This document shows, one piece after another, positions 42,281-64,000 of a DNA stretch of 64,000 bases. The DNA lies in the NCBI RefSeq assembly GCF_037042905.1, contig NC_087246.1, positions 51,026,001 to 51,090,000 of the forward strand, read 5' to 3'. Numbering within the stretch: position 1 is the stretch's first letter; each line of letters begins with the position of its first letter. Origin of the DNA: Lytechinus pictus. Taxonomy: Eukaryota. The translations under genes and the position numbers were made by a program. The notes under the pieces were generated by a model, which did not search any database, was not told the DNA's origin, and was given only the letters and a program-made list of their open reading frames with translations.

Positions 42281-42359
<79 letters not shown>

Positions 42360-42391
42360 TGGTAGTGGTAGTGGTAGTGGTAGTGGTAGTG

Positions 42392-42466
<75 letters not shown>

Positions 42467-42470
42467 ATAG
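42281..42470. repeat. (GTA)n / (GTAGTG)n microsatellite
   Basis: Directly visible trinucleotide array; explains the poly-Val ORF. Confidence 0.95.
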
Positions 42471-42814
42471 AAGTAGTGGTAGTGATGGTATCAGTAGTCC
42501 AATAATGATCCAGGGGAAAAAATAATTAATGCAACATTATCTTGAGAATTATATGTTTATATATGATTATAATGTTTATGTATTGTGCGTTTGTGACCGA
42601 CCTTCCATGCGTTCAGAATAGAATCATAAACCTGGTAGATATGTCAACATGTATTATATACTTTATCTTGGATACAATTAAGACACGATTTCAATCAGTC
42701 CTGGCCGTTTCTTGCCAACGACTCTGCTCTGCTGAGAAGTTCTTGAAAATCAACTTCTCACAATGGATAATAACAGAATGATCAAGACTATAATGCAATT
42801 TTGAATTTCTTTAA

Positions 42815-44997: not shown

Positions 44998-47900
44998 TTA
45001 ATGTAAGCTTATCATTGATCCCCTAGATCCCATGCAGTACAAATTTTGATCAATGGTAATTACATTGATACTACCTTTAATTAGTCCATTTTTATAATAA
45101 TAATGTCATATTTTACCAAGGGTAGCCATTCAAGTTTCAAAGCTGTTCTCCCAGCGGGCCCTGGTTAACTTGAAAAAAGATTGACGACACGAGCGTCTGA
45201 GTTTATATGGACAAAAAAAAATTGATGTTCAAATTCTTTCTGCTTCAGATGAGTAGATGTTCCATGAACTCAGATAAGTGCAATTCATAACATGAAATCA
45301 AGGTGGTATTCAAATCTTGAGAAACCACTGCCATTGTGATCAAGTTTTGATTAATGCATACCGCCCTCTATTGCTAACAATGATCTTAGATATCAAATCA
45401 CGGAAATAAAAGAATATCCCGTGTACCAAATATGCATCACCAAGTGCATGATGGGATTGAAATGTTTATGATAACAAAACGAATCCCTGAAAATCACGGA
45501 AGGTAGAAATGGCAGTGAAATCACCTGCTTCCAAATTTTACAACCAAAACAACACAGCAGTACCTACTTTTTAAAGAGGATATATATTTTGTCAAAAATT
45601 GAGGATTATCCCCCCCTTTTTCAAGGTTTGTAACAGCCTGCAAGTGTAGGGAATCCTACTTTTTTTTTAAAGCACACCTTAGAAAATAAAGAGAATGTTC
45701 TCCATCATTATCTATCAAATAGTACTTCATGATTTCCAACGTACTCGAAATTGAACATCTAGAGCAGCTAATGCTGCCATGATAAGGACGGACCAACAAA
45801 TAGCATAAAACAAATATGTCATCTGTTCAACATTTTTAAAGACCAATGACTTCATTGTCCAAAATTTTCAAAAATATGCTTAGGATTCATTGCTCAATTC
45901 ATCGAATTACTTGATGTGTTTGTTTCTCTGATCATATGTAGACGTAAGAAGAAGGTTTGTGTATACTCAAACCCAATTCTACACTTTCAAATATTAATTA
46001 AGGCATCATAATTGACTACCCATCTCCCCTGCACAGCATACACACTACTCATGCAATAGCAAGAAAGAGACATTTGATTTACCTTCTATATTTACATGAT
46101 AAATATTTAGAGTACAGCTCTGTATATATCCTCCTCCATATACCCTGTGCGCTCCTTCACAACACTGCACAATTAATTATTTATCGCAATCTTTATATAC
46201 AATTACTTCATTTACATCAGTTAAACCTAGTTTAAATTATTTGTCTTACCACTACTTTCTTTGATAAAATAAAAAAAGAGAAAAAAAGCAAGAATTTGAC
46301 ATTTGAAACTCAAATCCAACTGAAAGTTAACTGACAATAATGGTTATCACGAAAATTTATGCTGCATCTTACTTCATAACTTATACAGGATAAGAATGCC
46401 AATGACCTAAATCATCATTTAAAATATAAAAAATAGAATGAAGTGTGATGTCGTAAAACAAACTAAGATTTCGCATTTTATTGTTTTTATTATCATGTCA
46501 GCAGAACATGATGAAAATATCCAAAGCCCATATTTGCCAGAAATTGGTTCTCCGGGACATTTAGAGCCAGGCTAATACATTGACTTAAATTTGGCTTATT
46601 AGGTATTCATTCATGTGGTCATATCTTGGCCCCTATTGAACTGATTCCTACCAAATTTGAGCTCAGCTGTGGGCATTTTCCAACATGCTCCTCTAAAATA
46701 TGAAGTAAAACTGATAAAATGCCACCCCCCCCCTAAAAAAAATGGACGCAGTCACGTTGGTACTACATATCTTTATTCACTGTGTAATATACAGTGATTC
46801 TACAAGTCACTTTTACAATGAACATTTAAGAACTGTGTCACAAGTTTTCTATTTCAGCTATTTTCAGTCCAGAAACAAACATTGTATAAACATGTTTTGT
46901 GCTTTTTTAATGAATGCGCGATGCTTAGTATACACGAGGGTGGATAGATTAAGCAAGACTCTTGACAGCATAGTAAAAGTAATGCTTTGAACAAGAGGAA
47001 ATCAAGTTCACATGATAAAGCAAAAGAAGAAAAAAGAAAATCAACTTAAATTTAAAACTTGAAGATAAAATAGCTCAGTTGATGGAGTAGGGCCTCGTAA
47101 GAGAAGACCCTCTTGGTAAGGCATCAACCCTCATTTTTCGGTCCATCGGAGAAGACTTCAAAACATCAGTCCTCTTGTTGTTTTTAACAACTATAAACAT
47201 CAACCATCCTCAACCAAATCTGAATAATCACCTTGAGGGAAGTGGGACAAATATAAATAAGGACTCTTAAAAATACCTGGTTAAAAATTAAGTACAAGTT
47301 CTACAACAAAAACATAACTTTTTTAAGTAAAGGAGAGTGCAGCTGCAGAAAAAGCACAAGTCTTTCAAAGAGTCAGCCAAAAACTAAATAAATAAAACTA
47401 ATCTAAAACTTAAAAGGACAAAAGAAACACCTAACAGTCAAAACAAATGCACTGAGCTTTCTGCAATTCAAAATGCATTAAAGAGCTAAATATTGTCACA
47501 AGATATACTCAAGATATATGTACTCAAAATCTTTCTTGAAAAGAAGTTATTTCAGAATCAAACATACGAGTTTATAAAAGTAATGATAATAATTGTTAAC
47601 TCACACATATCAAATGAATGTCAGAACATGTCTTTTGCAGCAACAAAGGTCAAAATTCTTTTAAAAAGGTGCATGCATGGGGCTTAGATGCATTTAGATG
47701 CATCATGCATCTAATCTCAAATACAAAGAAATTACTTTGCAAGGAATCAGTCTGTTCCTCTTTCACTTTTTATCTTTTACAAAATTTTCACTCAGCTATC
47801 CATTAAAGTCTGTATACATTTTCATCCTACGGTTACTTTGAAATTAATTTTTCACACCAGAAAGCCTAGTACAGAAAAAAAATGCATATTCATCTCATTA

Positions 47901-48656
47901 TTATGTACAAAATTATGAATGTACATTAAAAATCAACATTTTTATTCCACAATAATTCAATTTTTCTTACCATAATAAAGTCTCTCATACTATTGATCAT
48001 ATATCTCTCTCAAACCTCTCTTTCTCTCTCTCTCACTTACCTCTTAATCTTTCTGTCTATCTATTGTCTATCTATCTATCTATCTATTTACCTATCTTTC
48101 TTTCTATCTCTATTCTATCCATTCCTCCCTCTCTTTTTCATCCCCAACTCTGTCTCTCTCTCTTCATTCTTCTCCTACATCATTCTTTATCATCACTGAC
48201 CAATATTTCTTAAAAGAATAATTACAAATGTGTAAATAAATCTTATTACCACCAGTCATTGACTTACAAGGCCATTATAAATTGGAAGCACGGCTTTAAC
48301 AGCAATAGTCATTACCTAAATTACACAATTTAGGGACAAACAAGTTTAAAAAAATCATACGAGCCTCACGGGGCTCATATGAGGCTTGTGATTTCTCTGA
48401 ACTTCTTCAAAATACTTTAAATTGAACTGCAGCACAAGATAAAAGGTTGCACCGTTGCAATGCACAACTGCCATGTACGCCTTCCTCAATAGCACACAAA
48501 CAAATGGAGGATATCAATTTGTGAGTCAGTGAGAAGTCTGAATGTAATGTTTTTTCACAGTTCAAAAAAAACCCAATAGATTTTAGTGTGATAAGTTTCA
48601 GCGAGTCGTTCTGACAATCAGCAGGGCTTTACAGCAGATCTGGCTATGTCAGCAGA

Positions 48657-48799
48657 GGCCCGTTGCAGAAAGAGTTGCTATCAATCGCAACTCTAAAAAT
48701 CATGCGCAACTTGATTTTCAACCAATCAACAGCGCGCATTTGGGACTTGCGATTGATTTTTTGACTTGCGTTTAAACGCAACTCATTCTGCAACGGGCC
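48657..48799. mobile_element. Short palindromic MITE (Harbinger-like ends)
   Basis: GGCCCGTTGCAGAAAGAGTTGC ... GCAACTCATTCTGCAACGGGCC. Confidence 0.65.
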
Positions 48800-48839
48800 C
48801 CTGGTCATGTAAAACATTTATCCTCTCGCTAATAAAGAG

Positions 48840-49050
48840 GAGGCACGATAGCTCAGTCAGTCAGTAGAGCGGAGGTTTCTGATTACGCGGTGACCTGGGT
48901 TCGATTCCCACTTGGTGCGCTAGTGCCCATTGGTAAGGCAGTAAAATCCTCATACCAGGTCCCTCGGACGGGACCTTAAGATGTTGGTCCTCTGGTTGCT
49001 TGCTTACAAGCATTCATGCTTTCTTTATAGCAATCAGGTTTAACAAAATC
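48840..49050 (+). mobile_element. tRNA-derived SINE
   Basis: A box TAGCTCAG, B box GGGTTCGATTCCC, then GGTAAGGCA...CCTCGGACGGGACCTTAAG...GGTCCTC; a degenerate relative lies at about 47070-47190. Confidence 0.7.
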
Positions 49051-49466
49051 ACCACCATAAACCTTGACATAATTCCATTGGCTTAGAGAGAGCAGGTGTC
49101 CTTCCACGTGGATGCAGTTGGATGCGGGTCTTAAAAGTCTTTAAGTACCCATTACAGATTCAGAGAATGCCTTATGAAAATATTTTAGACCTTTTCGTTT
49201 TAATCTTTGAAGCCCTGGGGCCAGTAAAGGGTACACCTGAGGTACCTGGTGAATTTGCTGCTCTGAAATTAACGTCTGCTGATTGGACTGTTCATGCAGG
49301 AAGAGTCCAGTTTCATCAAAACACAAACCCAGCATGGTTTCCTAAGCTGTGGCTTTGGATAAAGAGTGTATGAGCAATGCATACGCCAGCATTAATACAT
49401 ATTAATTGAAATAATATGGGACTAACTTACAGTCTTGTTGCAAGAAACAAAATATTCTCTCCATTA

Positions 49467-49659
49467 ATACATGATATGGGACCACATATTCATCATTACT
49501 TTGCATTCTGTTGCCTACACCTAAATACATGATATGGGACCATACCTTGATCATGACTTGGCATTCTGTTGCCAACATATAAATACATTATATGGGACCA
49601 CATGTTCATCCGGACTTGGCATTCTGTTGCCAACATGTAAATGCATGACATGGGACCAC
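49467..49659. repeat. 58-bp tandem repeat (about 3.3 copies) in the SLC7 3' UTR
   Basis: Units start at 49467, 49525, 49583 and 49641 (ATACATGATATGGGACCA...TTGGCATTCTGTTGCCAAC). Confidence 0.9.
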
Positions 49660-49685
49660 TGTCCAGCTGCTGTCTTGAAACAGTC

Positions 49686-52600
49686 TCATTCTGATTTTGT
49701 TTGCGGCTCCGGACTAACAACCAGTAACAACTTCTGGAGAAATAACGTTGTCTTGTCGATGGCATTCTGGAACGCGGGTGGTTTGTTCTTCCACCAGACT
49801 CCTATCAAGTAGACTGGTATCCCGGATGCTGCAGCAACGATTCCTAGACCACAATCCCTCGGGGATGCATACAAAGCCATCCCAAGAACAAAGAGTACTC
49901 CAAGCATGTAAATGATTGGTACAACAATGGGAACCTGAAAAAGATAGTAAATGGCATGATGATAGTAAATGATAGTAAATGGAGAATCTACATACTATCA
50001 CTTTTTGTTAATCAGTTTATCTCCAGTTACTTTCAGAAGTGGCAACAATCACAAAATTCAAACATAATTGAACACAAGGTGGTTCGCGAACCACGAGTCT
50101 CGCCTAATATCGCGATCGATAAAATATGCAATATGATCTTTTGACCTATCATCCTCATGGACACACGTGTGGTATAACCAATGTTATTTGTACCACGTGT
50201 AAACACAAATGATGCAAAAATAAAGAAATGAGAGCAATTTTAACAAAAACTTATAGGTCAAGTCCACCCCATAAAAATGATGATTTGAATAAATAGAGAA
50301 AAATCAAACTTGCATAACGCTGAAAATTTTATCAAAATCGGATGTAAAATATGAAAGTTTATGACAATTTAAAGTTTCTCTATTTTTCCACCAAACAGTG
50401 ATATGCACAACAGTGACATGCAAATGAGACAGCTGATGATGTCCCTCATTCACTATTTCTTTTGTTCTATATTGTTTGAATTATACAATATTTCATTTTT
50501 TACAGATATGACAACAAGGACCAACTTGACTGAACCATATAATATTAAACAATATTAATTCCACATGTTCAGGGAGGAATTAATTGTTGTTTCACTTGAC
50601 AATGAGGAGAAAATAGGAATATTTCATATCTCATATAATAAAATACAAAAGAAATAGTGAGTGGATGACATCATCAGTCTCCTCATTTGCATACCGACCA
50701 GGATGTGCATATAACTGTTTTGTGAAATTTAACTTTCTTATTTTACATCCGATTTTGATGAAATTTTCAGTGTTATGCTTGTTTAATTTTTCTCTTTTTA
50801 TTCAAATCAACTTTTTGTTGGGGTAGACTTGTCCTTAAACATTTTGGAACAGACTAACGGATGGACAGACATTTTCCAATCAGATGCCGGGATCATGCCC
50901 GTATTTCACTTGCAAAGTTGGATTTGAGATCCTCTTGTTTTGCTTATGTGTAAAGTCTATGGGAAGTGTGTAGCTCAATGGGTAAGGCATGAGACTTGCG
51001 TCCTTAGGGTCCAGGGTTCGAGCCCAGGGGGCAGGGGTGAACATGAGAATTGTTTTTTTCTTTTTTTTCCCTTTTCAACATTTCACAAACGGTCCTTTAT
51101 GACCATTACAATGTTTGTAAAATAAAACATTGGACAATAAGAGATTAAAATCCCTTTTAATGTACAATTTTCCTGTACAATATGTATATGACCTACACTT
51201 TTTCAATTCCCTCTTTTTCAAGAGTATTCAACAAGTTCTTTTCTTAAGAGAAGTTCAGTTTTCATCATGATGATCATGTTGATCTCCATAAACATGCTGA
51301 TTGTCTTCCTGATCATGAAATCAGAGACAGATCACCTAATTCGTCCTCAAGACGAATTAAAATTCTAGTTATTCCTGGTTTTGGTTTCCCTAACTTAGCC
51401 ACTAGATATTAACCATCTATTCCTGTATATGAAGATATTGAGAGAAAATCATCAAGTTAAAATTAAGGTTAATTGGTTTCATTTCATGTCTGATCATCAT
51501 ATCGGATATAATATACCAATTAACCTTGATTTTAATGTCTCTCTCAGAATTATTGCTGGCAATGATGACAATCACTTGAGTTTGGCATTAAAGCACAACA
51601 AAATTCTAGGATTAATAGTATCGGGAGACACTGTTTAACCTTGGCTTGGATTTGAACCTAAATTACTTGGAACAAGAGCAAACCATTCTACCACCATACT
51701 TTCATACAATGACAAGTGGAGATCGGCATTACCTTGAAAGGCCGTGGCAGGTCCGGATGTTTCCATCGGTAGTAGGGGATGATGGCTACAGCCAGGAAGT
51801 TCATGATCCACTCGATGAAAGCCACAAAGTTGAGGAGGAGGAATATGTCATTGTTCAACACCATCAAGATGGCGATTGGTAGCTGGACAGATTTAAAACA
51901 AAACAAATGTGAGAAATTTTGGGAGATTTAACTAAAAAAAGAACTATGAAGGATCTAATATGCACTTGCTTCGAATTTTAGGGAAGGGGAACTAAAATAA
52001 GGATGTATTATACACTTGTTTGGAATTTAAAGGAGAAGAATTAATATGCTTTTGTTGAAATACAGTACAAATTCAATTATCGAAATGCAGATACACAGTA
52101 TTGGACACAAAAAGAATCCCAGCAATGGCGTGTTTTCCTTCAGCAAGAAATTTACCCACATTTTGCTGCACTTGACCCAGGTGGGGTGAATGGGTTCCTG
52201 GTAGGATTTATTCCTTGAATGTTTTAGTGCCTATATGGTGGCTCAGCTACAGCCAGGGTAATAATATGATACCAAGTATCAAGTGCAGTAGAGTATATGC
52301 AATTATAGTAGCTGTGCTATACAAATGGAACATATTATTAACATGGAAATAATGAGTACAGTGATTTAGCTCCTGAGTATTGCAATTTTTGTAAATGAAA
52401 AATATTACAATGAAAATTATAATGAAAATTAATGATCAATAACATACACGCCAGACTTTTTTTCCGAGGGCTGTAAATGCTAACACATTCTGCTGATGAG
52501 TATATTCGTTGGATGGACTTTTGGTGACACAGCATTTGCTCCTGCGACAATTGCTCCGGGCTTAATTTCGTCAAAGTTGTAGGGTTAGTGTAAGGGTTGC

Positions 52601-55600
52601 AATAGGGTTTTTTTCTTAGGTTTAGCCTATAGGGTAGGGTATAGTGTTAAACCCAGGGTTGAAGTTGTTCATTATATGAGAGTGTGGAATTTAGAGTGGA
52701 GCAATTGTCGCCAGAGCAAATGTCATGGAACCGGACTTTTCTTATACCAAGGGTTTCTAATCCGAGACATAACGAAGGAAAATGAGCAGAACCGGTACAT
52801 CGCGAGGTGGTTTTATGAACCGGTTTGGAAAATCACTTCCAAGATCGCTTGGACCGTTCTCATTACACGTTATACTAGCTTCCAAACTAGTTTTAGGAAG
52901 GTAGTGAGAACGGTGTCCTATCCATTCATTGATTGAACTGTCCATGCTATACCTCATTACTGGGAACCCAGGAATGAATTTGGATTGAGGTGTGAAACTA
53001 TGCCCCAATATATAATCAATCTAAGTTCTAACGATCAATTTCAACTTGATCAGTAATAAAATACTACTGTGAAACCTGTATATAAAGAGACCACTTAAGC
53101 AATCTTAATGATAAGGTGGTCTCTGTGGACAGGATCCTTTAATATGAAGGTGGACCCCATGTCTGCCCACCAAACTTAAGATTAAACATAAATTTCTTTT
53201 TTATTTCACAAAAAATTTTAGTTGATAATGTTCTTTATATTTTTGTAAGTAAATGTGCCAAAAATGTCATAAAAAATTGAAAGAAATATATGATTTTCTT
53301 GGAAAAAATCCCGGCCAGTCATTTTCAGATTGAACAAAAAAAATGGCGCTCCATGTCTGCGCACCCATTCACTTTACACATGATTCAAGGATTTTGATGA
53401 GAAAGGCCGCATTTTGAGGCTGTCACATGAAATGCCCGAAATTCATTTTTCCACCATTTTGAGTCAGATTTTTTAATAGATACCTTTCTAGGTATTGCAT
53501 CTGTAAAGTTTCTGATCGTTGCTTATCTTCTTTTACTAGAATCGCGCAGATACGTGTGTGGGGACCGCACAGACTTGGGGGACCTTACCATACATGTTTT
53601 GATGTGGAATTCTATTCAAGGGAAACCAAATCTGTGCTCTTTTTGGCCAGATGGTCCTTCTATCAAGATGGTTGCTAAGATAGGTTTGTCCGACAGTAAT
53701 TACATTTGCTTTACATGGCACGGCACCTAGCATTACTTCATCAGAAGTCTCAAAGGACATTCATCTTTGTAGATAGATGAGACACATGATTTAGATTAAA
53801 TGTAGGGTTTTTTTTTTCACTTACTGTGAAGATGGCAGCAGGCAGAGGTGTCTTCTTACGTACATGAATCATTGACATGAGCTTTGGCATCAAACCTTCA
53901 CGGCCGGCCACGTACAGGATTCTGCAGTATAAACAGACCAAAGTAGGTTATCTCATTAGAATTTCCGTCACCATCCAAACTTCAGTAAAAATGCTACAAA
54001 AGAATCATCATATCAAACGTTGAGAATAATTATGCACTCTTGTTTTAAATTCATAAAGTGAAATATCAAAGAGTGTAAATAAACATAAGCTCTTGCTGCA
54101 GTTGCTATAATCAAGAAAATAACATATCACAAAGCTCCACATTAGCTTTCGAATCATAAAACCAGTCTAACATTGACATCAGAGGGTTGAAGTACTATTA
54201 ACATGCAGTTTCAATTGCCAATAGTGCACTACCTTGATGTTCTATGATCTACAGTGTTCAATTAAAGGGGTGTAAAAGTAAAAAATAAAAATAAAAAAAT
54301 AAATAAAATTGGGAAATTGAATGGTAAAAAAATGCAAAAGCCTCATATATTGAATGATTAATTATTATTTACTTCACTAAATACTTGTAGTTATAACTTG
54401 TACAGGTATTAGAAGAATTTCTAGAAAAGTAAAATTATCTAGACAACCGTAGATCAACATGACCCTTCAACTTTTCAAAAATGAATTTATCATATTGTAT
54501 CTACCAATCATTTTCTGAAGATTACAAAAAAAGACAAACCGCTGTTTGATATTGATTCTAAGGTATAATATCTCATAGAGGATAGCTTCTTCCCTGCCAT
54601 TAATAGTGTCATAAGTCATCTCAGTTTGCTTCAAAATCAAAACCACCTTGACATCTTGATAATTCTAACCATTTCTTGATAATTCTAACCTTTATTAAAA
54701 AAAAAAACCTTTCATATTCCTGGTTCCTCTTTTTATACCTCCAGGATAAAAATGAATATTCCACAGACAAGAAGTAGATAGATTTTTCACTGCGGTCAAA
54801 ATTTATACTCCCACCGTTGCCAGACCGAAGATAACCTCTGTGACTTTTAACTACATGTACGACCTTAATATCCCCATAACTAATCAGATCGTCATCCCTA
54901 TATGCAACTTGGAGGAAGTTTGAAGTTGATATGTCAAATGTTGTATTAGTTTTCGTAACAAGCAAGCACGATGGACAGATGACCTCATGGGCGGAAATCC
55001 CAGGGGGACATGTCCCCCCTACCAAAAATAGTAGGGGGACACAATATCAAATGTCCCCCTTACTATTTTTGGTCTTTTATGATGGAGAAAAATACATGAC
55101 TTCACAATTGAAATAATACATGTATTTTGGAGTAACTGACTTTACATTTTTGGTGATAACCTTCTTTTTTTGCTTGTCAAATTTTCCAGGCCCTGGTCCC
55201 CCCTACCTTTGGGGACAGATTTCCGCCCATGGATGACCTGAAAAAACAATTCATGTAGGCATGAAAATAAACTTCCACAAAGTTGCTATAACCCTTTAAG
55301 ACCACATAACTGACATCGCAAGTCTGTTCATAATCACTTCACTTACAACTAAAAATTGAATTGCATATGTCTTTTAATACCTGAAAATGAAACTGTTTTG
55401 ATAATATATTTATAGTCACATGACATGGAAATTGTCACAACAGAAAAAGCAATCCTCCTTTATAAAGCGCTTCATTATGAAGATTCTCTTTCATGAAGTA
55501 TGAGCTATCTCCTTGGTTTGACTGCTTTTTCTTCTGGCTTAAAAGTACATTTTAGGGAAATTTCTGATGAATTGACCCTACAGGATTGAAATTTGAAGAC

Positions 55601-58600
55601 TTTTCTGTAAGAAATGGCTGCCGGTATATTATGCATCTTCGCTTGCCTAATTCTTTGGAATGTTTGTCTTGGAGCAGATAATTTTGCAGATGAAAGAAGA
55701 TTTCTCCACCTTCAATGTGCTTCTATTTCTAAGACTACAGCCAAATGCTCTCATCTGAACCTCACTTCTGTACCCCAATCTCTACCAAATACCTTAGAAA
55801 TACTGGACCTGTCATTTAACAATCTCACAGCACTTCACAATGCATCATTTGAAAAGTACGACCTTCTTCGGATTCTGAATATCGCTCACAATTTCATCCA
55901 CGTCATCGAGAGCGGATCTTTTGCAAATCTCCGGGAAATTGAGACAATCATTTTGAATAACAACGTCATTCACGAACTGTCTGCAACTTTTCACATGAAC
56001 GATTCAAAACAAATAACTTTGATTCTGTCTCATAATGAAATGAGGGGAATCGCCCATCTGAATGGACTCTGTTTTACAGAGACAAAGAAAGAGAATACTG
56101 GAGATTCAGGGTCGAGAAATATAACCCTGATTGATTTCTCACACAACAATTTGACATCAGTTGAAGAAAAAGACTTTGCCTCTTTCAGTAACTGCTCTAT
56201 TTATAAATTCAAAATTGGGAATAATAAGCTGACACGTCTTCCAATGAATGTGTTTTCTGGATTATCTAGGGTGAGAAAACTTGATGTGAGCCATATAAAC
56301 CTTCAACAGTTTGAAGTTTCTTCCTTCTTAGGAATTGAAAGTATAATAGAGATTACATTGGAAGGATCACACATAAGGTCTATTGTACCGTTGAATGACT
56401 CCGCTTGCATCTCAAGTGGACAATTCACTAAACTTGAAATATTAAATCTGAGAGACAACAAAATAGAACAAGTTCCTGACTACACATTCTTGGCATTCAA
56501 GTACCTAGAGATCCTTGATCTGGGTACAAACAGAATAAGTTTTATATCAAACAAATCTTTCTGTGAAATGAGAAAGTTAAGGGTATTGAGTTTGCCAAGA
56601 AACAAAATCAAAAGTCTCCAGGATGGTGCTTTTTCTTGTCTTGGAAATTTAGAATACATCACATTGGCACAGAACAACTTGTTTATCTTGGAACCAGCTT
56701 GGTTTGCTCATTGTAAATCACTCAAAATTCTGAATCTTTTTCGGAGCAACATCAATGAAATTAAAGATGGTTCCTGGATCACACCCAATTTACGGATACT
56801 TGACTTATCATACAACAAGCTCAGTTCTATTGGAAGACTCATGTTTACAGGTCTATCTCATTTACGCATTCTGAAATTAACGGGAAATAACCAACTCTAC
56901 ACCATCAAAGGTGATACCTTCAGTAATATGACGGCTCTCAGATCTCTTGAAATGGACAACATAGCCAGGCTAGTTCTGAATGACACTTTTGCTGAGTTAA
57001 GAAGCCTAATCTACTTGGACTTTTCTTTCCTTTACTCCCATGGGGCACAAATTGCCTCTGTACACCAATTTACACACACCTCTGCATTACAAACATTAAA
57101 TATGTCATTCTGTTTTATCCATTCTCATGATTTGGTGAACACTAAAACAAAAGGATCACTTTTTGATGGGCTAACATCCCTTCGCACTCTTCGAATGGTA
57201 GGAAATAATCTTGTTGGTTTGCCCAATGTCTCTTGGATGTTTTCTCCCCTACAGCGAATGGAAATCCTTGATTTAGGCCATTGTCAACTGCATTCACTGA
57301 CATCAGAGTTATTTAAGAACCTGAGTAGCCTACAAGAACTCAGACTCACTAACAACGAGCTGGTGGACATATCTGAACATGCATTCCAGAATTTGCACAA
57401 TTTGCATAATCTTCTTCTCCAATTCAACAAAATAAACTCAATAGGTAAAAACTTGTTTAAAGAAACCGCTAATCTACGACGGCTGCTCCTAAATAGCAAC
57501 CAGATATCTATGGTAGCACCTAATACAATAATACCATCACACTTGAAAGTGTTTAACATTGCAGGAAACCAACTGATCTGCAACTGTCAACTAACTTGGT
57601 TCATGCAGTGGCTCCGTTCTACAAATGTCTCGTTGGGACCACAGAATGAAACATTGTGTTCCATTCATTCATTCAGTGAACTTAAGAACAAGCCAGTTTG
57701 GACATTTCATCCAGAAAAATACTGTGGAATCAACACCCTCCTACTTACTGGTGTTAGTTTTGCAATCATTGCAGTCTCCCTACTCTGTCTTCTGGTCTAT
57801 TACAAGCGCTGGTGGTTCGACCACAAGATATTCCTTCTGAAACTAGCCATCATTGGCTATGATGAAATCACAGAGGATGCTGATCCAGATGACTATGAAT
57901 ACCAGCTTAACATCATGTTCCATGACGATGACACCGAGTGGGTTAATGAAAATATGAGGCCTGCACTGGAAGAAAGGATGCCTCATCTGCAGAACATTGC
58001 CTTCGGAGATGAAGCCCTTCATCCAGGGATGTACTATCTCAATGCCTTAAATCATAACCTTGATAACAGCTTCAAGACAGCCTTGTTGATCAGTAACAAG
58101 TCAGTGGGTGATGCTTGGTTCATGACCAAGCTACGGATGGCCGTTGAGCATGTGAATGACACCAAGTTAGACAAGATCATCTTGATATTCCTAGAGGACA
58201 TCAAGCAAGCCAACTTACCATATCTTGTAAGACTCTTGCTAAGTAGGAACAAACCTTATTTGTTGGTTACAGAAGATGAAGATGGTCAAGAGTTGTTCTG
58301 GGCTCAGTTTGAAAAAGAAATGAGGACCAACAAGGTTCTCAACAGTGTTATTCCAACTTAAACCTGATGCAACACCAAGAGTTAAAATCCTGTATATGGG
58401 GTTTCTCAAAGGCTTATGCTTGGATTTTTTTCATGAGCATGAAAAACTTAACACAACTTCAGTTTTTAATGTTACTGTTTCTGAAAGCACTGGATTAGCA
58501 ATTTTAGAAAATTCAAAATTCAAAATCCTATCATTTCATCTTTTTTTAAAAGTTGATATATTTTTATTGACTCCCAAATGACCTTTGACATTGCCTATTG

Positions 58601-61600
58601 ACAACAATCATTCATTTTCTGATACTCGATAACCATTACATGAATATTTTATGAAATAGGGATTCATACTTTCAATATCATTTTGAAAATTCGAAATATT
58701 AACCATGGTGAAGTTTTTTTATATTGATTGCATATGGTCAAAATTCATTGATGCTCAATGACATTTTACCTTGATCATGTGACCTGCAACTCATACAAGA
58801 TGACCAGTGATACTTGATTTACCCTTATGCCCAATCTTCAATAGGTCCTTAATATACTTCCAAAAATTAAATTCTGGTAAAGACTTTCAATATTGACGAC
58901 GACACAGGTGCCACCGCTTTCCGCAAAGGTGTGCCTATAATCTTGTTTTGATATCCAGAGTCCAGTAACACAAAGGTTAGCGATTAATCGTATGCTTGTG
59001 TTTAATGATTGATTGTACATTGTGTCCAATGCAATCAATTGTAAAGATACTCTTCTACGATGATTGCTAAGCTTTGTGTTACAGGCCCCAGGAGAGACAA
59101 AAATTTGTAGAATAATAGACTTAGAAAATTTACACAAAAGTGCCAAGCTAAGGCACATGAGGCAGCACTTCTCACACTCCATAAAATTACAAGTAGTAAC
59201 AATTTTTGGCTATGTGTTTTATAATACCAAAAAAATATCTTCTTTTCAGATCTTTTAAAAGGAAGAGGTCTGGTCATGAGAATAGCCTACTAGGTCAAGT
59301 GTACATCAACTTATCAACAAATTTTCAATAAAGAGATCAGGTTCTGCAAAGACAAATCCAACATGTGGTCAAGATCATAAAATGAATACTTATGAATCCA
59401 ACAGAATGGCTGCCAAATGCTCAAGTTTTTTAATGTGTCAAATTAATATTTTCTTGGTAAAATAAGCAAGACATTCTGTCAGAAGGCATTTCCCCCCAAG
59501 CTATCACCAATGGAAGTACCAATGTGTGCTTATACGTGCAGGCAATTTTCAGCCTACTTGGTTACAGCTGGTTTTCATTAATTCACAAGGTTTGGCTTGT
59601 TAGAAAGTAAGTTGGAACTTACTAGATAAATGATAAGAAATCACACTAATTGAAAAGACTTTCTCTAGAATTTCTTGCTCACTGTACTTACACTAGCCTT
59701 AAAATGTCATATTTTGATAATCATAGATTGAATGATCACTGATATATGATAATAATCAAATAAGTAAGAATAATATTTAATTTGGTGTGGTGTGTACTAC
59801 TAAATAGTGTATAATTTGATCGAAATGGTGTATGTATTTTGAAAATGTTTCACAGAAAAAAAAATTGTCGCACTGTAGACAGATAGTTACAACACATGAT
59901 CAAATTTATTTTTTGTCACTGTATGATGTATCTGGTGTTTACTAATTATTTTGTAGAATTACGCCAAAATGGTCTCTGTATTTTGTGTTTCAGTTTGGTG
60001 TACTGTATGCAAATAATTAGGTTTTGGTCATTGTATGATGTATGCAACATAACTTTTAACAATACTGATTGATATTGGTGATACTAAGCTCAATCAATTA
60101 ATACATGAAAGTATTGGGGATATTGAGATACCTGTAGAATACAATTGTTTTAACAGTAAATCAATAATAAATTTAGATTACAATGCATTAATGAGCCATA
60201 TTTGTAATTGATCAGTCAATTTGATTTGAATCTTATCTGAATCTGCTTCGGAAACCTCACCTTGAGCTGCCAAAGAGAGCGCCATTGACGGTACCAGTGC
60301 AAGACAGAGCCACAAATATTGACATGATCCAGGCAAACACCGGGAACAATCGCTTAGCAAAATCCTGTGAGGAAGGTAAAAACAAAAAAAATAATAAAAA
60401 AGACTTAACCCTAAATAGACTGGGCTATTTCGACGCCTAAGAAGACTGGGGGGGGGGGGGGGCTGATTCAGCCCCCCTTATGATCTCGGCCGTGGATCGC
60501 GCGATCCCGACGAAAATTCGCACGCGTGTTACCCATGGCATTATCTACAAAACTTTAATATCAAATTCTGCAAAAAATCTAATTTCTCATTAATTATGCT
60601 AATTTATGCGTAAATCATAAGTTTGCTTTAATTAACAAAATAATGCCCCTAAAATGCTAATTTTTGTTTCACATACTCTTTATAGGCATCTGATCAAATT
60701 TATTTTTTTTGAAATGTCAACATCACATTTATTTTCTTATGTATTTTTTTGTTTTCTTAATTTCTTATGTATTTCTTTGTTTTTTGACTTTTTGTTTTTT
60801 ATTGTTTTTTCAATGGAAACTGTCGGGGACTTTATTTTGACCATAAACAAGATAAAATTTATTGATTTTAAGCAGTAAAAGGAAAAATAATGATACATTT
60901 TAAGAATTTTGGCTAAAAACACTTTTTGCATTGGATTTGTACACAAATTCACGTTTTGAGCAATTTTTGGTCTGCATGCACTTATTTGTTGCGTTATTTC
61001 CGAACCGCGTATCCGGGGGTCACAATTTTGGTCTCAAAAGTTGCGTGAGACTTGAAGTCAACAAGCGACCCAGTCAAAAAATTTCGCGCCGCGGATTTAT
61101 CGCGAAAAATGTCGAGGGGGGGCTGGATCAGCCCCCCCTCCCGTCTTCTTAGGGTTAAGAAAGGAGAAGAATGAGAAATAATCATGTGTATTATTTTAAG
61201 AAAATATTTATTTATTTTGTAAACCTCATCAATGATCAAGGATCAATGAAAATGACATAACCAATTCAATTCAAAAATTTTCAAGGCAGTATGACAAGAC
61301 TGAACGAATGGATCATAGTGCGGTTTCAACATTTGATATGCCTATAGCAAATTTGTTGCAGAAATATTGCACCGTGTTATTGGAAACAACTTTCACTGAA
61401 ACGACCAAGAATATCTGCACGTTTTGGAAGTACTATGCCTCTAAGCAGATAATATGAAGATGCCATAAAATTCACGTTGTTTAAAAGAGAAGGCTATAAA
61501 AAGAAATTTGATGCGCTTACAATGGCGCGCACCGCATTTTATAGCTATGCTGGTGATGTCATAAAAGCAGACAATGGCTTTCCTGTCTATGCAATCTGTA

Positions 61601-63820
61601 CAAATCTGAAACATTTTTCTTTTAATTATGTAATAGAAAAAAAAACAAATGATGCACAGGTTTAAGTTATTGACACTAGCTGCCATGTGGGCATCTCAGG
61701 TAGTCTCAATGTTGTACAAGACATTTGATGTAAGCACATCATGCTGATTGCACCATCTAAAATCCTTGAGTGTCTTTTATCCATCAGCAAGACACTCACC
61801 TGTGCAATATTTGCATAGAGAAGATGACAAAATGAATCCTTATCAAATGATAGGTTGCACGTGCACATGACCAAACATTTATTTCACATAAACACATAAA
61901 TTTGTTCATGACTGGTGATTAGGTGTCTTGGGTCAAAATGACCTCATTATTTTGAGATGGAAGACAGGTTTATCAAATAAGAAGGATCTACATAAAACAA
62001 ATAATACACAGTGTTTTGCTTGAGCAATGTACATTACAATAACTACCCACAATAATCAGCATCGAAATGGTCCAGTTCTCAAGGTATGACATGTGCATAA
62101 GTTTTACTAATGCCCTTGTTGGTGTATATCATCTCTGTAATCAATACCACAAAATAATTTAATAGCTGGATACTAACCACTGCTACTGCATTTGAATTGA
62201 TGATTTCAGGAGGGCTCAGGACAGTCAGGTAACTAACATTGGTCAAGAGATAGATGGACGTCACAAGGATCATAGAGATGATAACACCTAGAGGAATATT
62301 CCTGTCACAGAAAAAAACAAGAAATTCACTCATAATAAATTATAGAAATACCAAATATAAAGTTCGATGGAAAACAGTAGAGACCAAAATTTCCCACACA
62401 TTTCAAAAACATGATTTATTATGAAAAAAAAGAGGGGGTCCGCATACATGAACAAAACAAGGGAAGATAATTCCAATGAGATGACTTCTGATAAAATAAA
62501 ACAAATAATCTACATCACGTGTAAAAATATTTTTTAACAGAATCTAAAGATTTCATAGTTGCTTTTGATATGAATAATAAATAATGGCGCAAGTTTATAT
62601 CGCACCATGCCTTTCAGAAATTATACTCCTAGCAGTTTAGAGAGAAAGAGAGAGAGACGGGGGGGGGGGCTTTTAAATTTTATCATCAAAGCAACAGAAT
62701 CAAACACCATAATGCTTACCTTGCAGGTCTCTGCACTTCCTCTGTAATGAACATAAGATATTGCCTGAGGAGTAAAAAAATATTTAAAAAATTTCCAAAA
62801 ACTGATATTTAGTATTGCATTAAAGCTTCATAACATATTGGCCTATTAACCCCCTACTGTCTTGGGCGATTCCATACGTGTCGTACAGGAAATTTTGAAA
62901 TTTTCTAGTTTCCTAGCTGAATGCTTGAGCAATAAAATATTATTTTTTGTCACTGATAAAGCTATAGCGGGTAGTCATGTGAAAAACTCAGAAATGTCCT
63001 GTATGACACGCAACATTTTAACCTCTAATTCACCAATGGACGACATATTCTTGCTGGTTGTCAGTTTTTGCATGCCTACCCAGTAGCACTTTAATATTAC
63101 CACAAAACAAATTGAAGTTCTTCGTTCTTTGGACAGCAGGTTGAAAAATATTGTGAAAATGGCTGATTTTTCTTGCATGGAATCACCCTCTTTATTAAAG
63201 ACCAAATTTGATTTTAGACACAGAAGTGATTACCTAACAGTATGAAGTAACTACCTGATGTTATAATATGTGGAATGTAAAATATCTTTCAAATCAAGTG
63301 ACCAATGTGTTATTTTTTTAATTCGACCTATCATTCTGAACAGTAGTAGTAGTAGTAATAGTTAGAAGTAGTAGTAATAGTAGAAGTAATAGTAGTAGTA
63401 CTAGTAGTAGTACTAGTAGTAGTACTAGTAGTAGTACTAGTAGTAGTACTAGTAGTAGTACTAGTAGTAGTACTAGTAGTAGTACTAGTAGTAGTACTAG
63501 TAGTAGTACTAGTAGTAGTACTAGTAGTAGTACTAGTAGTAGTACTAGTAGTAGTAGTTAGTAGAAGCAGTAGTAGTAGAAGTAGTAGTACTAGCAGTCG
63601 GAGTAGTAGTAGTAGTACTAGCAGTCGGAGTAGTAGTAGTAGTACTAGCAGTCGGAGTAGTAGTAGTAGTACTAGCAGTCGGAGTAGTAGTAGTAGTACT
63701 AGCAGTCGGAGTAGTAGTAGTAGTACTAGCAGTCGGAGTAGTAGTAGTAGTACTAGCAGTCGGAGTAGTAGTAGTAGCAGTAGCAGTAGCAGTAGCAGTA
63801 GCAGTAGCAGTAGCAGTAGC

Positions 63821-63853
<33 letters not shown>

Positions 63854-64000
63854 TGAATTTATCATCAATATGACAATGACAATTATTATCAAAGAAAAAT
63901 TACAATGACAGTATAACTAGACATACCATCCTGAAAATGCAAATATGCCTGCATTGAGAGCCAATGGGAAGCTTGTTGGGTTATCATAACCAGAGAAGGC
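49686..64000 (-). CDS. SLC7 family L-type/y+L amino-acid transporter light chain, 3' part; exons (64000)-63927, 62764-62720, 62301-62178, 60364-60261, 53921-53825, 51882-51733, 49934-49686
   Basis: All introns are GT-AG with consistent phases (2,2,0,2,0,0). Motifs: [50 protein letters not shown]...[43 protein letters not shown]. Confidence 0.93.
50255..50835. mobile_element. Kolobok/T2-type MITE (family B)
   Basis: AGGTCAAGTCCACCCC.../...GGGGTAGACTTGTCCT with degenerate TTAA flanks; shares the subterminal TCAAAATCGGAT motif with family A. Confidence 0.7.
50961..51037 (+). pseudogene. tRNA-like relic (SINE head or tRNA pseudogene)
   Basis: TAGCTCAATGGGTAAGGC and GGGTTCGAGCCC boxes are present, but the acceptor stem does not pair. 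Confidence 0.5.
52116..52340 (+). mobile_element. 5'-truncated SINE (family of 265-570)
   Basis: GTGTTTTCCTTCAGCAAGAAATTTACCCACATTTTGCTGCACTTGACCCAGGTG...GAATGGG matches the reverse complement of the copy near 440-505. Confidence 0.7.
52534..52722. mobile_element. Small TIR element with TAGGGT-rich interior
   Basis: CATTTGCTCCTGCGACAATTGCTCC / GGAGCAATTGTCGCCAGAGCAAATG inverted ends. Confidence 0.65.
54986..55231. mobile_element. hAT-type MITE upstream of the TLR
   Basis: TIR CATGGGCGGAAATC/GATTTCCGCCCATG; perfect 8-bp TSD GATGACCT (54978-54985, 55232-55239). Confidence 0.9.
55383..55564 (+). promoter_or_regulatory. Candidate TLR proximal promoter motifs
   Basis: ISRE-consensus GAAAATGAAACT (55383-55394), TATA-like TATAAAG (about 55461), kappaB-like GGGAAATTTC (55555-55564). 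Short motifs; function unproven. Confidence 0.35.
55614..58361 (+). CDS. Toll-like receptor (single-cysteine-cluster, echinoid expanded type), 915 aa, intronless
   Basis: Signal peptide, LRRNT (C...[14 protein letters not shown]), many LxxLxLxxN repeats, [22 protein letters not shown]...C...[25 protein letters not shown], and a TIR domain (YQLNIMF...EWV...LHPG...FKTALLIS...IILIFLEDI...FW). Confidence 0.95.
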   Translation: MAAGILCIFACLILWNVCLGADNFADERRFLHLQCASISKTTAKCSHLNLTSVPQSLPNTLEILDLSFNNLTALHNASFEKYDLLRILNIAHNFIHVIESGSFANLREIETIILNNNVIHELSATFHMNDSKQITLILSHNEMRGIAHLNGLCFTETKKENTGDSGSRNITLIDFSHNNLTSVEEKDFASFSNCSIYKFKIGNNKLTRLPMNVFSGLSRVRKLDVSHINLQQFEVSSFLGIESIIEITLEGSHIRSIVPLNDSACISSGQFTKLEILNLRDNKIEQVPDYTFLAFKYLEILDLGTNRISFISNKSFCEMRKLRVLSLPRNKIKSLQDGAFSCLGNLEYITLAQNNLFILEPAWFAHCKSLKILNLFRSNINEIKDGSWITPNLRILDLSYNKLSSIGRLMFTGLSHLRILKLTGNNQLYTIKGDTFSNMTALRSLEMDNIARLVLNDTFAELRSLIYLDFSFLYSHGAQIASVHQFTHTSALQTLNMSFCFIHSHDLVNTKTKGSLFDGLTSLRTLRMVGNNLVGLPNVSWMFSPLQRMEILDLGHCQLHSLTSELFKNLSSLQELRLTNNELVDISEHAFQNLHNLHNLLLQFNKINSIGKNLFKETANLRRLLLNSNQISMVAPNTIIPSHLKVFNIAGNQLICNCQLTWFMQWLRSTNVSLGPQNETLCSIHSFSELKNKPVWTFHPEKYCGINTLLLTGVSFAIIAVSLLCLLVYYKRWWFDHKIFLLKLAIIGYDEITEDADPDDYEYQLNIMFHDDDTEWVNENMRPALEERMPHLQNIAFGDEALHPGMYYLNALNHNLDNSFKTALLISNKSVGDAWFMTKLRMAVEHVNDTKLDKIILIFLEDIKQANLPYLVRLLLSRNKPYLLVTEDEDGQELFWAQFEKEMRTNKVLNSVIPT
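58958..59089. mobile_element. Short palindromic MITE
   Basis: GTAACACAAAGGTTAGC ... GCTAAGCTTTGTGTTAC inverted arms. Confidence 0.55.
60409..61154. mobile_element. piggyBac-like non-autonomous element
   Basis: TTAA|CCCTAAATAGACTGGG...CCCGTCTTCTTAGGG|TTAA; internal repeat CCTAAGAAGACTGGG and GGGGGCTG..TCAGCCCCCC palindromes near both ends. Confidence 0.8.
63343..63852. repeat. Compound (TAG)n-derived micro/minisatellite in an SLC7 intron
   Basis: 12-bp ACTAGTAGTAGT units, 27-bp CTAGCAGTCGGAGTAGTAGTAGTAGTA units, then (GTAGCA)n and (GTA)n. Confidence 0.95.

What the first reader, a model, noticed from the sequence alone, without database searches (positions are those of the whole stretch)
53922..60260. 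Intact intronless TLR nested antisense inside an SLC7 transporter intron
Seen: SLC7 exons 60364-60261 and 53921-53825 join in phase (...[13 protein letters not shown]) across a 6.3-kb intron that contains the full 915-aa TLR ORF on the opposite strand, with no other TLR in the window. Known: echinoid TLRs are greatly expanded, intronless and often in tandem arrays. Inference: a dispersed copy that inserted into a host gene, with possible transcriptional interference or co-regulation between amino-acid transport and pathogen sensing.
Basis: partly seen in the sequence, partly recalled or inferred. Interest (0 to 1): 0.75.

Follow-up and report, generated by a model that had tools for sequence, protein, structure and literature searches.

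The report
Toll-like receptor gene inside transporter intron
An intact, selectively maintained sea-urchin Toll-like receptor gene does sit backwards inside an intron of an amino-acid transporter gene, but the arrangement is old, shared with a sister species and typical of this animal's dispersed TLR genes, so it is ordinary.

Summary
A 915-aa single-exon ORF (55614-58361, +) lies inside a 6,339-nt GT-AG intron (53922-60260) of a minus-strand SLC7 light-chain transporter gene, whose seven exons in the window join in phase. The ORF is a complete TLR: signal peptide, about 22 LRRs, LRRCT, one TM segment and a TIR fold. The genome is Lytechinus pictus. The L. variegatus ortholog (94% aa) sits in the same intron in the same orientation, and the loci are collinear, so this is neither a misassembly nor a recent insertion. 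Selection is purifying (dN/dS 0.42; 0.09 for TM+TIR; p=9e-5). The TLR belongs to a 13-sequence clade seen only in Lytechinus; its sister paralog is nested antisense in EFTUD2. Of eight L. variegatus TLRs sampled, six are nested and all six are antisense. The scan had already noted a TLR triplet nested antisense in another gene of this genome, and I partly confirmed it. In three stranded RNA-seq runs the host exon is covered and the TLR has no sense reads, so transcription and any coupling with the host remain unshown. Verdict: a real but ordinary nested gene, a new member of a known kind.

The parts
55614..58361 (+). Single-exon TLR coding sequence, 915 aa including the stop. Signal peptide at residues 1-20, LRRNT cysteines C35/C45, about 22 LRR motifs, LRRCT cysteines C656/C658/C682/C704, TM at about 706-731, TIR core at about 763-904.
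   Evidence: ORF. Pfam LRR_8 E=2.5e-72 in 7 stretches. Hydropathy and motif counts. dN/dS 0.42 against the L. variegatus ortholog.
57900..58325 (+). TIR domain core, protein residues about 763-904.
   Evidence: Pfam TIR_2 and TIR score below their cut-offs (22.1 vs 28 bits; 17.5 vs 21.3). The AlphaFold model shows five beta/alpha units with pLDDT 80-92 in the core. Foldseek's top hits are the TIR domains of TLR1, TLR15, TLR2, TLR6 and TLR10, E=5e-9 to 6e-7, target TM 0.75-0.82. dN/dS for TM plus cytoplasmic part is 0.09.
55423..55613 (+). 5' flank shared with paralogs, putatively core promoter and 5'UTR. TATAAA at 55461, only partly conserved.
   Evidence: DNA homology with the nearest paralogs starts at 55423. 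A four-way alignment shows many invariant blocks despite dS of about 0.46. TATAAA position. Its function is inferred; no transcription start was observed.
58362..58780 (+). Conserved 3' flank, putatively the 3'UTR. The first poly(A)-signal variant, ATTAAA, is at 58866.
   Evidence: 96-97% identity to L. variegatus against 89-94% for neighbouring intron DNA. ATTAAA position. Inferred; no transcript end was observed.
53922..60260 (-). Host SLC7 intron, 6,339 nt, GT...AG, containing the whole TLR unit.
   Evidence: Splice sites read directly. Collinear with L. variegatus locus L013, where the intron is about 8 kb.
60261..60364 (-). SLC7 coding exon upstream of the host intron ([34 protein letters not shown] + AG).
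   Evidence: RNA reads at depth 1-6 in three runs, all first-mate-on-plus, which means minus-strand RNA in a standard stranded library. A contig in run X12 ends exactly at 60261 and 60364.
53825..53921 (-). SLC7 coding exon downstream of the host intron (A + [32 protein letters not shown]).
63927..64000 (-). SLC7 exon that runs over the window's end (full exon 64023-63927 in extended coordinates).
62720..62764 (-). 45-nt SLC7 micro-exon ([14 protein letters not shown]).
   Evidence: Phase-constrained search.
62178..62301 (-). SLC7 exon ([10 protein letters not shown]...NSNAVAV).
51733..51882 (-). SLC7 exon ([14 protein letters not shown]...HPDLPRPFK).
49686..49934 (-). Last SLC7 coding exon, with the stop codon.
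   Evidence: PDB match to the C-terminus of LAT1, xCT and LAT2, E=1e-16.
54965..55364 (.). High-copy interspersed repeat in the intron, upstream of the TLR.
   Evidence: Reads and contigs pile up from elsewhere; 94-100% of the records laid in each RNA run continue into unlike sequence (table-wide figure, not per repeat), and contig depth here is about 1,300-1,550.
58647..59164 (.). Interspersed repeats in the intron, downstream of the TLR.
   Evidence: 58647-58859 matches repeats near many paralog loci in either orientation. 58965-59164 collects reads on both strands at very high contig depth.

Best explanation
This is a functional, single-exon Toll-like receptor gene of Lytechinus pictus. It is a single-cysteine-cluster TLR: LRR ectodomain, one TM segment, cytoplasmic TIR. 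It belongs to a small subfamily seen only in Lytechinus. It sits as a self-contained transcription unit, on the opposite strand, inside one intron of a heteromeric-amino-acid-transporter light-chain (SLC7) gene. The unit comprises its own conserved 5' flank of about 190 nt, the ORF, and a conserved 3' flank of about 400 nt. A duplicate arrived in the intron, most likely by DNA-level duplication. This happened after the subfamily arose and well before L. pictus and L. variegatus split. It has been kept by purifying selection since then, strongly on the TIR and weakly on the ectodomain. The antisense orientation is what survives such insertions, because a sense-strand gene would put poly(A) and splice signals into the host pre-mRNA. 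The host simply splices the TLR out with the intron. No functional coupling between the TLR and the transporter is needed to explain the arrangement. Shown: anatomy, orthology, conserved nesting, selection, TIR fold, host exon expression. Inferred: autonomous promoter and UTRs, mode of arrival, absence of coupling.
For: Anatomy. TIR fold. The species is L. pictus, because two paralog ORFs are identical to RefSeq L. pictus proteins. The L. variegatus ortholog P0001 (94% aa) is nested antisense in a 510-aa AA_permease gene. The loci are collinear from 46772 to 64000. Selection: dS 0.063, dN 0.027, omega 0.42; ectodomain 0.52; TM plus cytoplasmic part 0.09. Fisher p=9e-5; 3.8 stops would be expected among 92 substitutions under neutrality and none occurred; the only 6 gap columns are in frame. 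Tree: the window TLR with Lv P0001 (100/100) is sister to the C13 copy with Lv P0002 (100/100), inside a 13-row Lytechinus-only clade (100/100). In the TIR-region search, Lytechinus members are 87-99% identical and all S. purpuratus, Diadema and ENA proteins are 69% or less. Divergence from the nearest paralog is dS 0.46, about 4-7 times the species divergence. The 5' flank is conserved among paralogs and the 3' flank between species. The youngest subfamily pairs share at least 5.7 kb including flanking tandem repeats, which indicates DNA-level duplication. Nesting is common: 6 of 8 L. variegatus TLRs are nested and all 6 are antisense. In this genome, three minus-strand TLR ORFs lie between plus-strand actin-family exons on C6. 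Published baseline: about 63% of human nested genes are on the opposite strand, 41% are single-exon, and there is no host-guest expression correlation (PMC3192792).
Against: No TLR transcript was seen. There were zero sense-strand reads over 2.7 kb in three RNA runs, with about 6% of each read. The tissue or stage is unknown to me. The proximal 5' flank is no more conserved between the two species than neutral intron DNA (91.6%), and the TATAAA is not conserved in the ortholog or paralogs, so the promoter assignment is weak. The mode of arrival is unresolved: no poly(A) tail, A-run or target-site duplication is visible, but at dS 0.46 such marks would have decayed. I could not examine the orthologous SLC7 intron outside Lytechinus.
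Confidence: 0.8

Rival explanations
1. Functional coupling. Convergent transcription of host and guest produces transcriptional interference or antisense-mediated silencing, or shared chromatin produces co-regulation. Amino-acid transport and pathogen sensing would then be linked.
For: The geometry allows it: the TLR lies entirely within the host's transcribed region on the other strand. In three RNA runs the host exon is expressed and the TLR is silent, which would fit mutual exclusion. All six nested L. variegatus TLRs are antisense.
Against: The hosts are functionally unrelated: SLC7, EFTUD2, pyruvate carboxylase, CFAP61, a LisH gene, an HYR/EGF giant and an actin-related gene. That argues against any link specific to the transporter. 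Six of six antisense is only p=0.06 against the published 63% baseline. Surveys cited in PMC3192792 found no host-guest expression correlation. A silent TLR in unknown, possibly embryonic, samples is expected anyway, because urchin TLRs are expressed mainly in adult coelomocytes and gut (PMC3367398).
Confidence: 0.1
2. Retrocopy. The TLR arrived by retroposition of an intronless TLR mRNA into the intron and later acquired a promoter.
For: Detectable homology with the nearest paralogs is compact: the ORF plus about 190 nt 5' and 35-60 nt 3'. The subfamily is dispersed over at least six chromosomes.
Against: There is no poly(A) tract or A-run after the homology end, and no target-site duplication. 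Intron loss cannot be scored because the parents are single-exon (PMC3367398). The shared 5' stretch is carried with the copies and conserved. Younger pairs of the same subfamily share several kb of non-transcribed flank including tandem repeats, a DNA-level mechanism.
Confidence: 0.15
3. A non-functional relic: an ORF open by chance that is never expressed.
For: No sense-strand RNA reads in three runs. The Pfam TIR scores are below their cut-offs.
Against: dN<dS with p=9e-5. P(no stop | neutral) is about 0.02 for the species pair alone. The frame is also open in the C13 and EFTUD2 paralog pair at dS 0.46. TM+TIR omega is 0.09. CDS indels are all in frame, while introns carry 25-110 gap columns per kb. 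The TIR fold is well predicted and matches TLR TIR domains.
Confidence: 0.04
4. Assembly artefact: the TLR was placed in the intron by misassembly, or the two flanking exons come from different SLC7 paralogs.
For: High-copy repeats flank the TLR (54965-55364 and 58965-59164), and no single short-read contig bridges from the TLR to an exon.
Against: An independent assembly of a different species has the same order and orientation with continuous alignment blocks: 54381-59021 runs across the upstream repeat and up to the near edge of the downstream one, and 59020-60406 continues across that repeat into the exon. All seven exons join in phase into one SLC7 frame. There are no Ns near the locus.
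Confidence: 0.01

Closest known systems
Lytechinus variegatus 'toll-like receptor 3' (P0001; GCA_018143015.1, CM031016.1 about 30.15-30.18 Mb), nested in a 510-aa AA_permease (SLC7) gene
   Same: It is the one-to-one ortholog: 94% aa identity, 99% in the cytoplasmic 200 aa. It sits in the same host intron on the opposite strand, with collinear flanks.
   Different: 913 aa against 915 aa. The host intron is about 8 kb against 6.3 kb because of repeat turnover. Ectodomain substitutions give omega 0.52.
Sea-urchin single-cysteine-cluster TLRs, group III and the Lytechinus-only subfamily IIIa (Buckley & Rast 2012, PMC3367398)
   Same: Single-exon gene with 21-25 LRRs between LRRNT and LRRCT, a TM segment and a TIR. 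The clade has about 9-10 members, is seen only in Lytechinus, and its nearest S. purpuratus relatives lie in tandem arrays.
   Different: Identity with the published 'IIIa' is inferred from clade size and taxonomic restriction. I did not compare with the paper's sequences. The paper does not describe nesting.
Nested intronic genes of metazoans (surveys cited in PMC3192792)
   Same: The guest gene lies wholly inside one host intron, is single-exon and is on the opposite strand. About 63% of human nested genes are opposite-strand and about 41% are single-exon.
   Different: Here the guest belongs to a large, fast-evolving immune receptor family in which nesting seems to be the usual state of dispersed copies (6 of 8 sampled).
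Vertebrate TLR1/2/6/10/15 TIR domains (PDB 7nux, 1o77, 4om7, 2j67, 7ylg)
   Same: The same five-stranded beta/alpha TIR fold (target TM 0.75-0.82). Box-like motifs are visible in the alignment: a YQLNIMF strand, GDEALHPG at the BB-loop position and an FW motif. The box names come from my recollection.
   Different: Only 21-25% sequence identity, and the Pfam TIR models score below their cut-offs.
SLC7 heteromeric amino-acid transporter light chains (xCT/SLC7A11, y+LAT2, b0,+AT, LAT1; PDB 7ccs, 9ky5, 7nf6, 6jmq), for the host gene
   Same: The exon pieces match these chains at E=6e-24 (TM1-3 region) and 1e-16 (C-terminus), in collinear order.
   Different: The exact orthology (A5-A11-like) cannot be resolved from single exons. 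The host's 5' exons lie beyond the window.

Membership tests
Toll-like receptor (single-cysteine-cluster type) | N-terminal signal peptide and an LRR ectodomain capped by LRRNT and LRRCT cysteine clusters | tested here: met
   Pfam LRR_8 E=2.5e-72 in 7 stretches, plus LRR_4 and LRR_5. Hydrophobic N-terminus at residues 1-20, 22 LRR motifs, C35/C45, and a CxC...C...C cluster at 656-704. The Pfam LRRNT and LRRCT models themselves did not hit.
Toll-like receptor (single-cysteine-cluster type) | A single transmembrane helix between ectodomain and TIR | tested here: met
   One hydrophobic segment at about 706-731, Kyte-Doolittle maximum 2.66.
Toll-like receptor (single-cysteine-cluster type) | A cytoplasmic TIR domain | tested here: met
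   By sequence it is below Pfam's cut-offs (TIR_2 22.1 of 28 bits; TIR 17.5 of 21.3). By fold it is met: the model has pLDDT 80-92 in the core, and the top matches are TLR1, TLR15, TLR2, TLR6 and TLR10 TIR domains at E=5e-9.
Toll-like receptor (single-cysteine-cluster type) | Ligand recognition and signalling through TIR adaptors such as MyD88 | not testable with these tools
   Needs experiments.
Echinoid TLR subfamily IIIa (Buckley & Rast 2012) | A strongly supported clade of 8-10 genes, present in Lytechinus, absent from Strongylocentrotus, sister to group III | tested here: inconclusive
   A 13-row Lytechinus-only clade has 100/100 support. TIR identity drops from 87% or more to 69% or less outside Lytechinus. 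About 9 loci in this genome are 63-79% identical. I did not compare with the paper's IIIa sequences.
Nested (intronic) gene, opposite strand | The guest's whole transcription unit lies within one intron of the host | tested here: met
   The CDS and the conserved flanks (55423-58780) lie inside 53922-60260. The transcript ends themselves were not observed.
Nested (intronic) gene, opposite strand | The host is a real, spliced, expressed gene across that intron | tested here: met
   In-phase exon chain. Stranded reads lie on exon 60261-60364, and a contig is bounded exactly by that exon. L. variegatus gene call of 510 aa. A read joining 60261 to 53921 could not be seen, because the 6-kb limit excluded one of the two exons.
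Nested (intronic) gene, opposite strand | The guest is transcribed on its own | tested here: inconclusive
   No sense reads in three RNA runs of unknown tissue. Purifying selection implies expression somewhere.
Retrogene | Poly(A) remnant, target-site duplication, and loss of the parent's introns | tested here: not met
   No A-run or poly(A) after the end of homology, and no target-site duplication. The intron criterion is uninformative because parents are single-exon. At dS 0.46 decay could hide these marks.
SLC7 / APC-superfamily amino-acid transporter (host) | AA_permease_2 fold covered collinearly by the exons | tested here: met
   Profile positions 216-261, 261-297 and 290-331 in genomic order. 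PDB matches to xCT, y+LAT, b0,+AT and LAT1 at residues about 72-198 and 417-510.

The most novel reading that the evidence does not exclude
Antisense nesting inside long, broadly transcribed housekeeping genes is not just tolerated. It could be a selected regulatory layout for Lytechinus TLRs. Host read-through across the TLR promoter would keep most TLR copies silent, giving restricted or cell-variegated receptor expression. Alternatively, introns of essential genes could serve as protected sites that shelter single-copy TLRs from the birth-and-death turnover seen in tandem arrays.
Probability: 0.1. Interest if true: 0.6.

Novelty: new member of a known kind. Interest (0 to 1): 0.22.

Why it matters
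On its own it matters little. It is a clean, well-supported example of a nested antisense gene, and the TLR and its ortholog are already in public annotation. Its use is as a data point. Together with the control sample, it suggests that in Lytechinus, whose TLR repertoire is smaller than that of S. purpuratus, most dispersed TLRs live inside introns of unrelated large genes on the opposite strand. A close S. purpuratus relative instead sits in a tandem array. A genome-wide count from the public annotations could test whether the genomic mode of TLR family evolution differs between urchin lineages. L. pictus is a genetically tractable urchin, so host-guest interference could be tested directly at this compact 6.3-kb intron.

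Tried and rejected
1. The look-up of encoding contigs with the window's TLR and with two L. pictus paralogs returned nothing. The tool withholds records of the window's genome, so I used L. variegatus annotation instead.

2. The first full-length homolog search was swamped by generic LRR proteins such as chaoptin and slit, and listed only three urchin hits. I repeated it on the cytoplasmic region.

3. The 50%-identity representative library cannot show whether the subfamily exists in other species, because closer relatives collapse into P0001's cluster. I did not use it for that claim.

4. I could not reach the S. purpuratus or other outgroup SLC7 locus. No tool takes a spliced protein by reference, and I did not type long sequences, so the depth of the nesting outside Lytechinus is untested.

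5. RNA evidence: the three raw RNA runs gave no TLR sense reads. This is 'no support', not evidence of silence. The few X14 reads at 57365-57764 have the host's orientation, so I read them as pre-mRNA. The X12 contigs over the TLR (depth 2) carry no strand information and may be pre-mRNA or DNA.

6. Looking for poly(A), A-runs or target-site duplications at the edges of the duplicated unit found nothing.

7. The sigma-70 promoter and terminator scan does not apply to a eukaryote, so I ignored it.

8. The TATAAA at 55461 is not conserved in the ortholog or paralogs, so I do not claim it as the promoter.

9. Rejected the idea that dS in the TLR (0.063) is anomalously low. Mismatch-only intron divergence is 6-11%, so dS is near neutral.

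10. The papers on L. pictus immunity and the P. lividus genome held nothing on TLR location.

Full report
**Observation**

The window carries a 915-aa ATG-to-stop ORF at 55614-58361 on the plus strand. On the minus strand, exon 60364-60261 (cacag|GAT...CAAG|gtgagg) and exon 53921-53825 (ctgcag|AATC...ACAG|gtaagt) have canonical splice sites. They join through a split AG|A arginine codon to give ...[16 protein letters not shown].... The intron is exactly 53922-60260, 6,339 nt.

**The host gene**

I extended the host model along the minus strand. Within the window there are seven exons: 64023-63927 (running over the window's end), a 45-nt micro-exon at 62764-62720, 62301-62178, 60364-60261, 53921-53825, 51882-51733 and 49934-49686. 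They join in phase into one open SLC7 frame that ends at a stop. More 5' exons lie 4-7 kb beyond the window.

The exon pieces hit Pfam AA_permease_2 at collinear profile positions. They also match solved xCT, y+LAT2, b0,+AT and LAT1 chains at E=6e-24 and 1e-16. The two exons flanking the TLR therefore belong to one gene, a heteromeric-amino-acid-transporter light chain. Its exact SLC7 orthology cannot be decided from single exons.

**The guest gene**

The ORF has an N-terminal hydrophobic signal sequence, LRRNT cysteines and about 22 LRR motifs. It has an LRRCT CxC...C...C cluster at residues 656-704 and a single TM segment at about 706-731.

Pfam's TIR models score below their cut-offs, so I tested the fold. 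An AlphaFold model of residues 730-915, built on 16 urchin sequences, has pLDDT 80-92 across five beta/alpha units. Its best structural matches are the TIR domains of human TLR1, TLR2, TLR6 and TLR10 and chicken TLR15, at E=5e-9 to 6e-7 and target TM 0.75-0.82. It is a complete single-cysteine-cluster TLR.

**Species and orthology**

Two paralog ORFs in the window's genome are residue-identical to RefSeq Lytechinus pictus proteins, so the genome is L. pictus.

The best public hit is L. variegatus 'toll-like receptor 3' (P0001), 94% identical over the full length. In the L. variegatus assembly it lies on the opposite strand inside a 510-aa AA_permease gene. The two loci are collinear from 46772 to 64000. 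Mismatch-only identity is 89-94% in introns, 96.6% in the TLR CDS and 96-97% in the roughly 400 nt after the stop.

This independent assembly rules out a misassembly. It also shows that the nesting predates the split of the two species.

**Selection**

| Comparison against the L. variegatus ortholog | Value |
|---|---|
| dS / dN / omega, whole CDS | 0.063 / 0.027 / 0.42 |
| omega, ectodomain | 0.52 |
| omega, TM plus cytoplasmic part | 0.09 |
| Fisher test for dN<dS | p=9e-5 |
| Stops expected among 92 substitutions if neutral | 3.8 (none occurred) |
| Gap columns in the CDS | 6, all in frame |

The gene is maintained by selection in the usual TLR pattern.

**Family placement**

The genome holds about nine loci at 63-79% identity on at least six chromosomes. 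Everything else is 43% or less.

In a maximum-likelihood tree, the window's TLR and P0001 pair with 100/100 support. They are sister to the C13 copy and L. variegatus P0002, inside a 13-row Lytechinus-only clade with 100/100 support. A search restricted to the cytoplasmic 200 aa shows a clean gap: 87-99% identity for Lytechinus members, and 69% or less for every S. purpuratus, Diadema or unnamed ENA protein.

This fits the Lytechinus-only subfamily 'IIIa' of Buckley & Rast 2012 (PMC3367398). I did not compare with their sequences, so that identification is an inference.

Divergence from the nearest paralog is dS 0.46. That places the duplication at about 4-7 times the age of the species split.

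**How it got there**

Detectable DNA homology with the nearest paralogs covers only the ORF plus about 190 nt upstream and 35-60 nt downstream. The upstream 190 nt still align, with many invariant blocks. So the copy carries a conserved 5' region of its own.

There is no poly(A) tract, A-run or target-site duplication. The youngest pairs in the subfamily share at least 5.7 kb, including flanking tandem repeats. That indicates DNA-level duplication rather than retroposition. At dS 0.46 the marks of either mechanism would have decayed, so I leave the mode of arrival as an inference favouring DNA duplication.

**Is the nesting special?**

It is not. The sister paralog P0002 is nested antisense in EFTUD2, and the L. 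pictus C13 locus is collinear with it.

As a control I looked at five further L. variegatus TLRs chosen only for length:

| Protein | Context |
|---|---|
| P0301 | nested antisense in a 5,785-aa HYR/EGF gene |
| P0319 | nested antisense in pyruvate carboxylase |
| P0332 | nested antisense in CFAP61 |
| P0276 | nested antisense in a LisH_2 gene |
| P0306 | intergenic |

P0121, a partial member of the subfamily, is also intergenic. Overall six of eight are nested, and all six are antisense. An S. purpuratus relative sits in a same-strand tandem array.

In L. pictus itself, three minus-strand TLR ORFs on C6 lie in a gap of about 44 kb between plus-strand actin-family exons. This agrees with an earlier scan note of a TLR triplet inside ACTL6A.

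Published surveys report about 63% of nested genes on the opposite strand and no host-guest expression correlation (PMC3192792). Against that baseline, six of six antisense has p=0.06. Six of eight nested has p=0.05-0.15 if 40-50% of the genome is genic; that fraction is my assumption. The pattern matches the ordinary bias: sense-oriented guests disrupt host pre-mRNA processing and are removed by selection.

**Expression**

Three stranded total-RNA runs of the same species label were laid on 54365-60364, with about 6% of each run read. The host exon 60261-60364 is covered at depth 1-6, all with the first mate on the plus strand, which means minus-strand RNA. A contig in run X12 is bounded exactly by that exon.

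The TLR ORF has no sense-strand reads. The two or three X14 reads at 57365-57764 have the host's orientation, so I read them as pre-mRNA. The tissues are unknown to me. Urchin TLRs are expressed mainly in adult coelomocytes and gut (PMC3367398).

This result rules out strong co-expression in those samples. It does not show that the TLR is silent everywhere.

**Verdict**

But the arrangement is old and probably fixed, it is typical of this genome's TLRs, and nothing links it to the transporter's function. It is a new member of a known kind, of low interest by itself. The family-wide tendency toward antisense nesting in Lytechinus is the only part that might repay a genome-wide count.

Noticed in passing
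L. variegatus loci L013, L014, L018, L020, L021, L022 (nested) and L015, L019 (not nested): Six of eight sampled L. variegatus TLR genes lie inside introns of unrelated large genes: SLC7, EFTUD2, an HYR/EGF giant, pyruvate carboxylase, CFAP61 and a LisH_2 gene. All six are on the opposite strand. An S. purpuratus relative (L023) is in a same-strand tandem array.
   Followed up: partly
G000:C6:14588308-14648096: Plus-strand actin-family exons flank a gap of about 44 kb that holds three minus-strand TLR ORFs of about 955 aa (14602480-14627671). This matches the earlier scan note of a TLR triplet nested in ACTL6A. I did not check that the actin-related gene is ACTL6A.
   Followed up: partly
L003 (G000:C6:513503-519211) and L005 (G000:C18:163913-169621): Two TLR loci near the starts of two chromosomes are 97.6% identical over the whole 5.7 kb fetched (proteins 99.3%), including flanking tandem repeats of about 150 bp. 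This is either a very recent segmental duplication or an assembly duplicate.
   Followed up: partly
L006 and L008 (G000:C2:33141500-33156648): An inverted pair of subfamily TLRs lies about 7 kb apart, with longer ORFs (1,035-1,043 aa). The first ~330 nt of the LRR region matches twice, which suggests an internal N-terminal LRR duplication.
   Followed up: no
window 62720-62764 (-): A 45-nt micro-exon of the SLC7 gene ([14 protein letters not shown]) is easy to miss. Without it the gene model would skip the loop before TM7.
   Followed up: yes
window 63320-63920 and 42220-42540: Long low-complexity microsatellite blocks produce spurious long open frames on the minus strand (poly-T, poly-L and poly-Y translations). 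The first block lies in an SLC7 intron.
   Followed up: no
window 60406-61155: A stretch of about 750 bp in the next SLC7 intron has no counterpart in the L. variegatus locus. Several L. variegatus-only blocks of 0.4-0.7 kb interrupt the TLR-bearing intron. Repeat turnover is fast around a stable TLR unit.
   Followed up: no
window 58965-59164 and 54965-55364: High-copy repeats collect RNA reads on both strands from elsewhere in the genome, at depth 10-20 in 6% of each run. They are expressed repeat families, not local transcription.
   Followed up: partly
run X12 on window 54365-60364: A run of unrecorded kind has one contig bounded exactly by exon 60261-60364, with 29 further letters that lie on nothing in the stretch. 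It also has depth-2 contigs over the intron and the TLR, with about 0.7% differences. It looks like total RNA from another individual rather than DNA.
   Followed up: no
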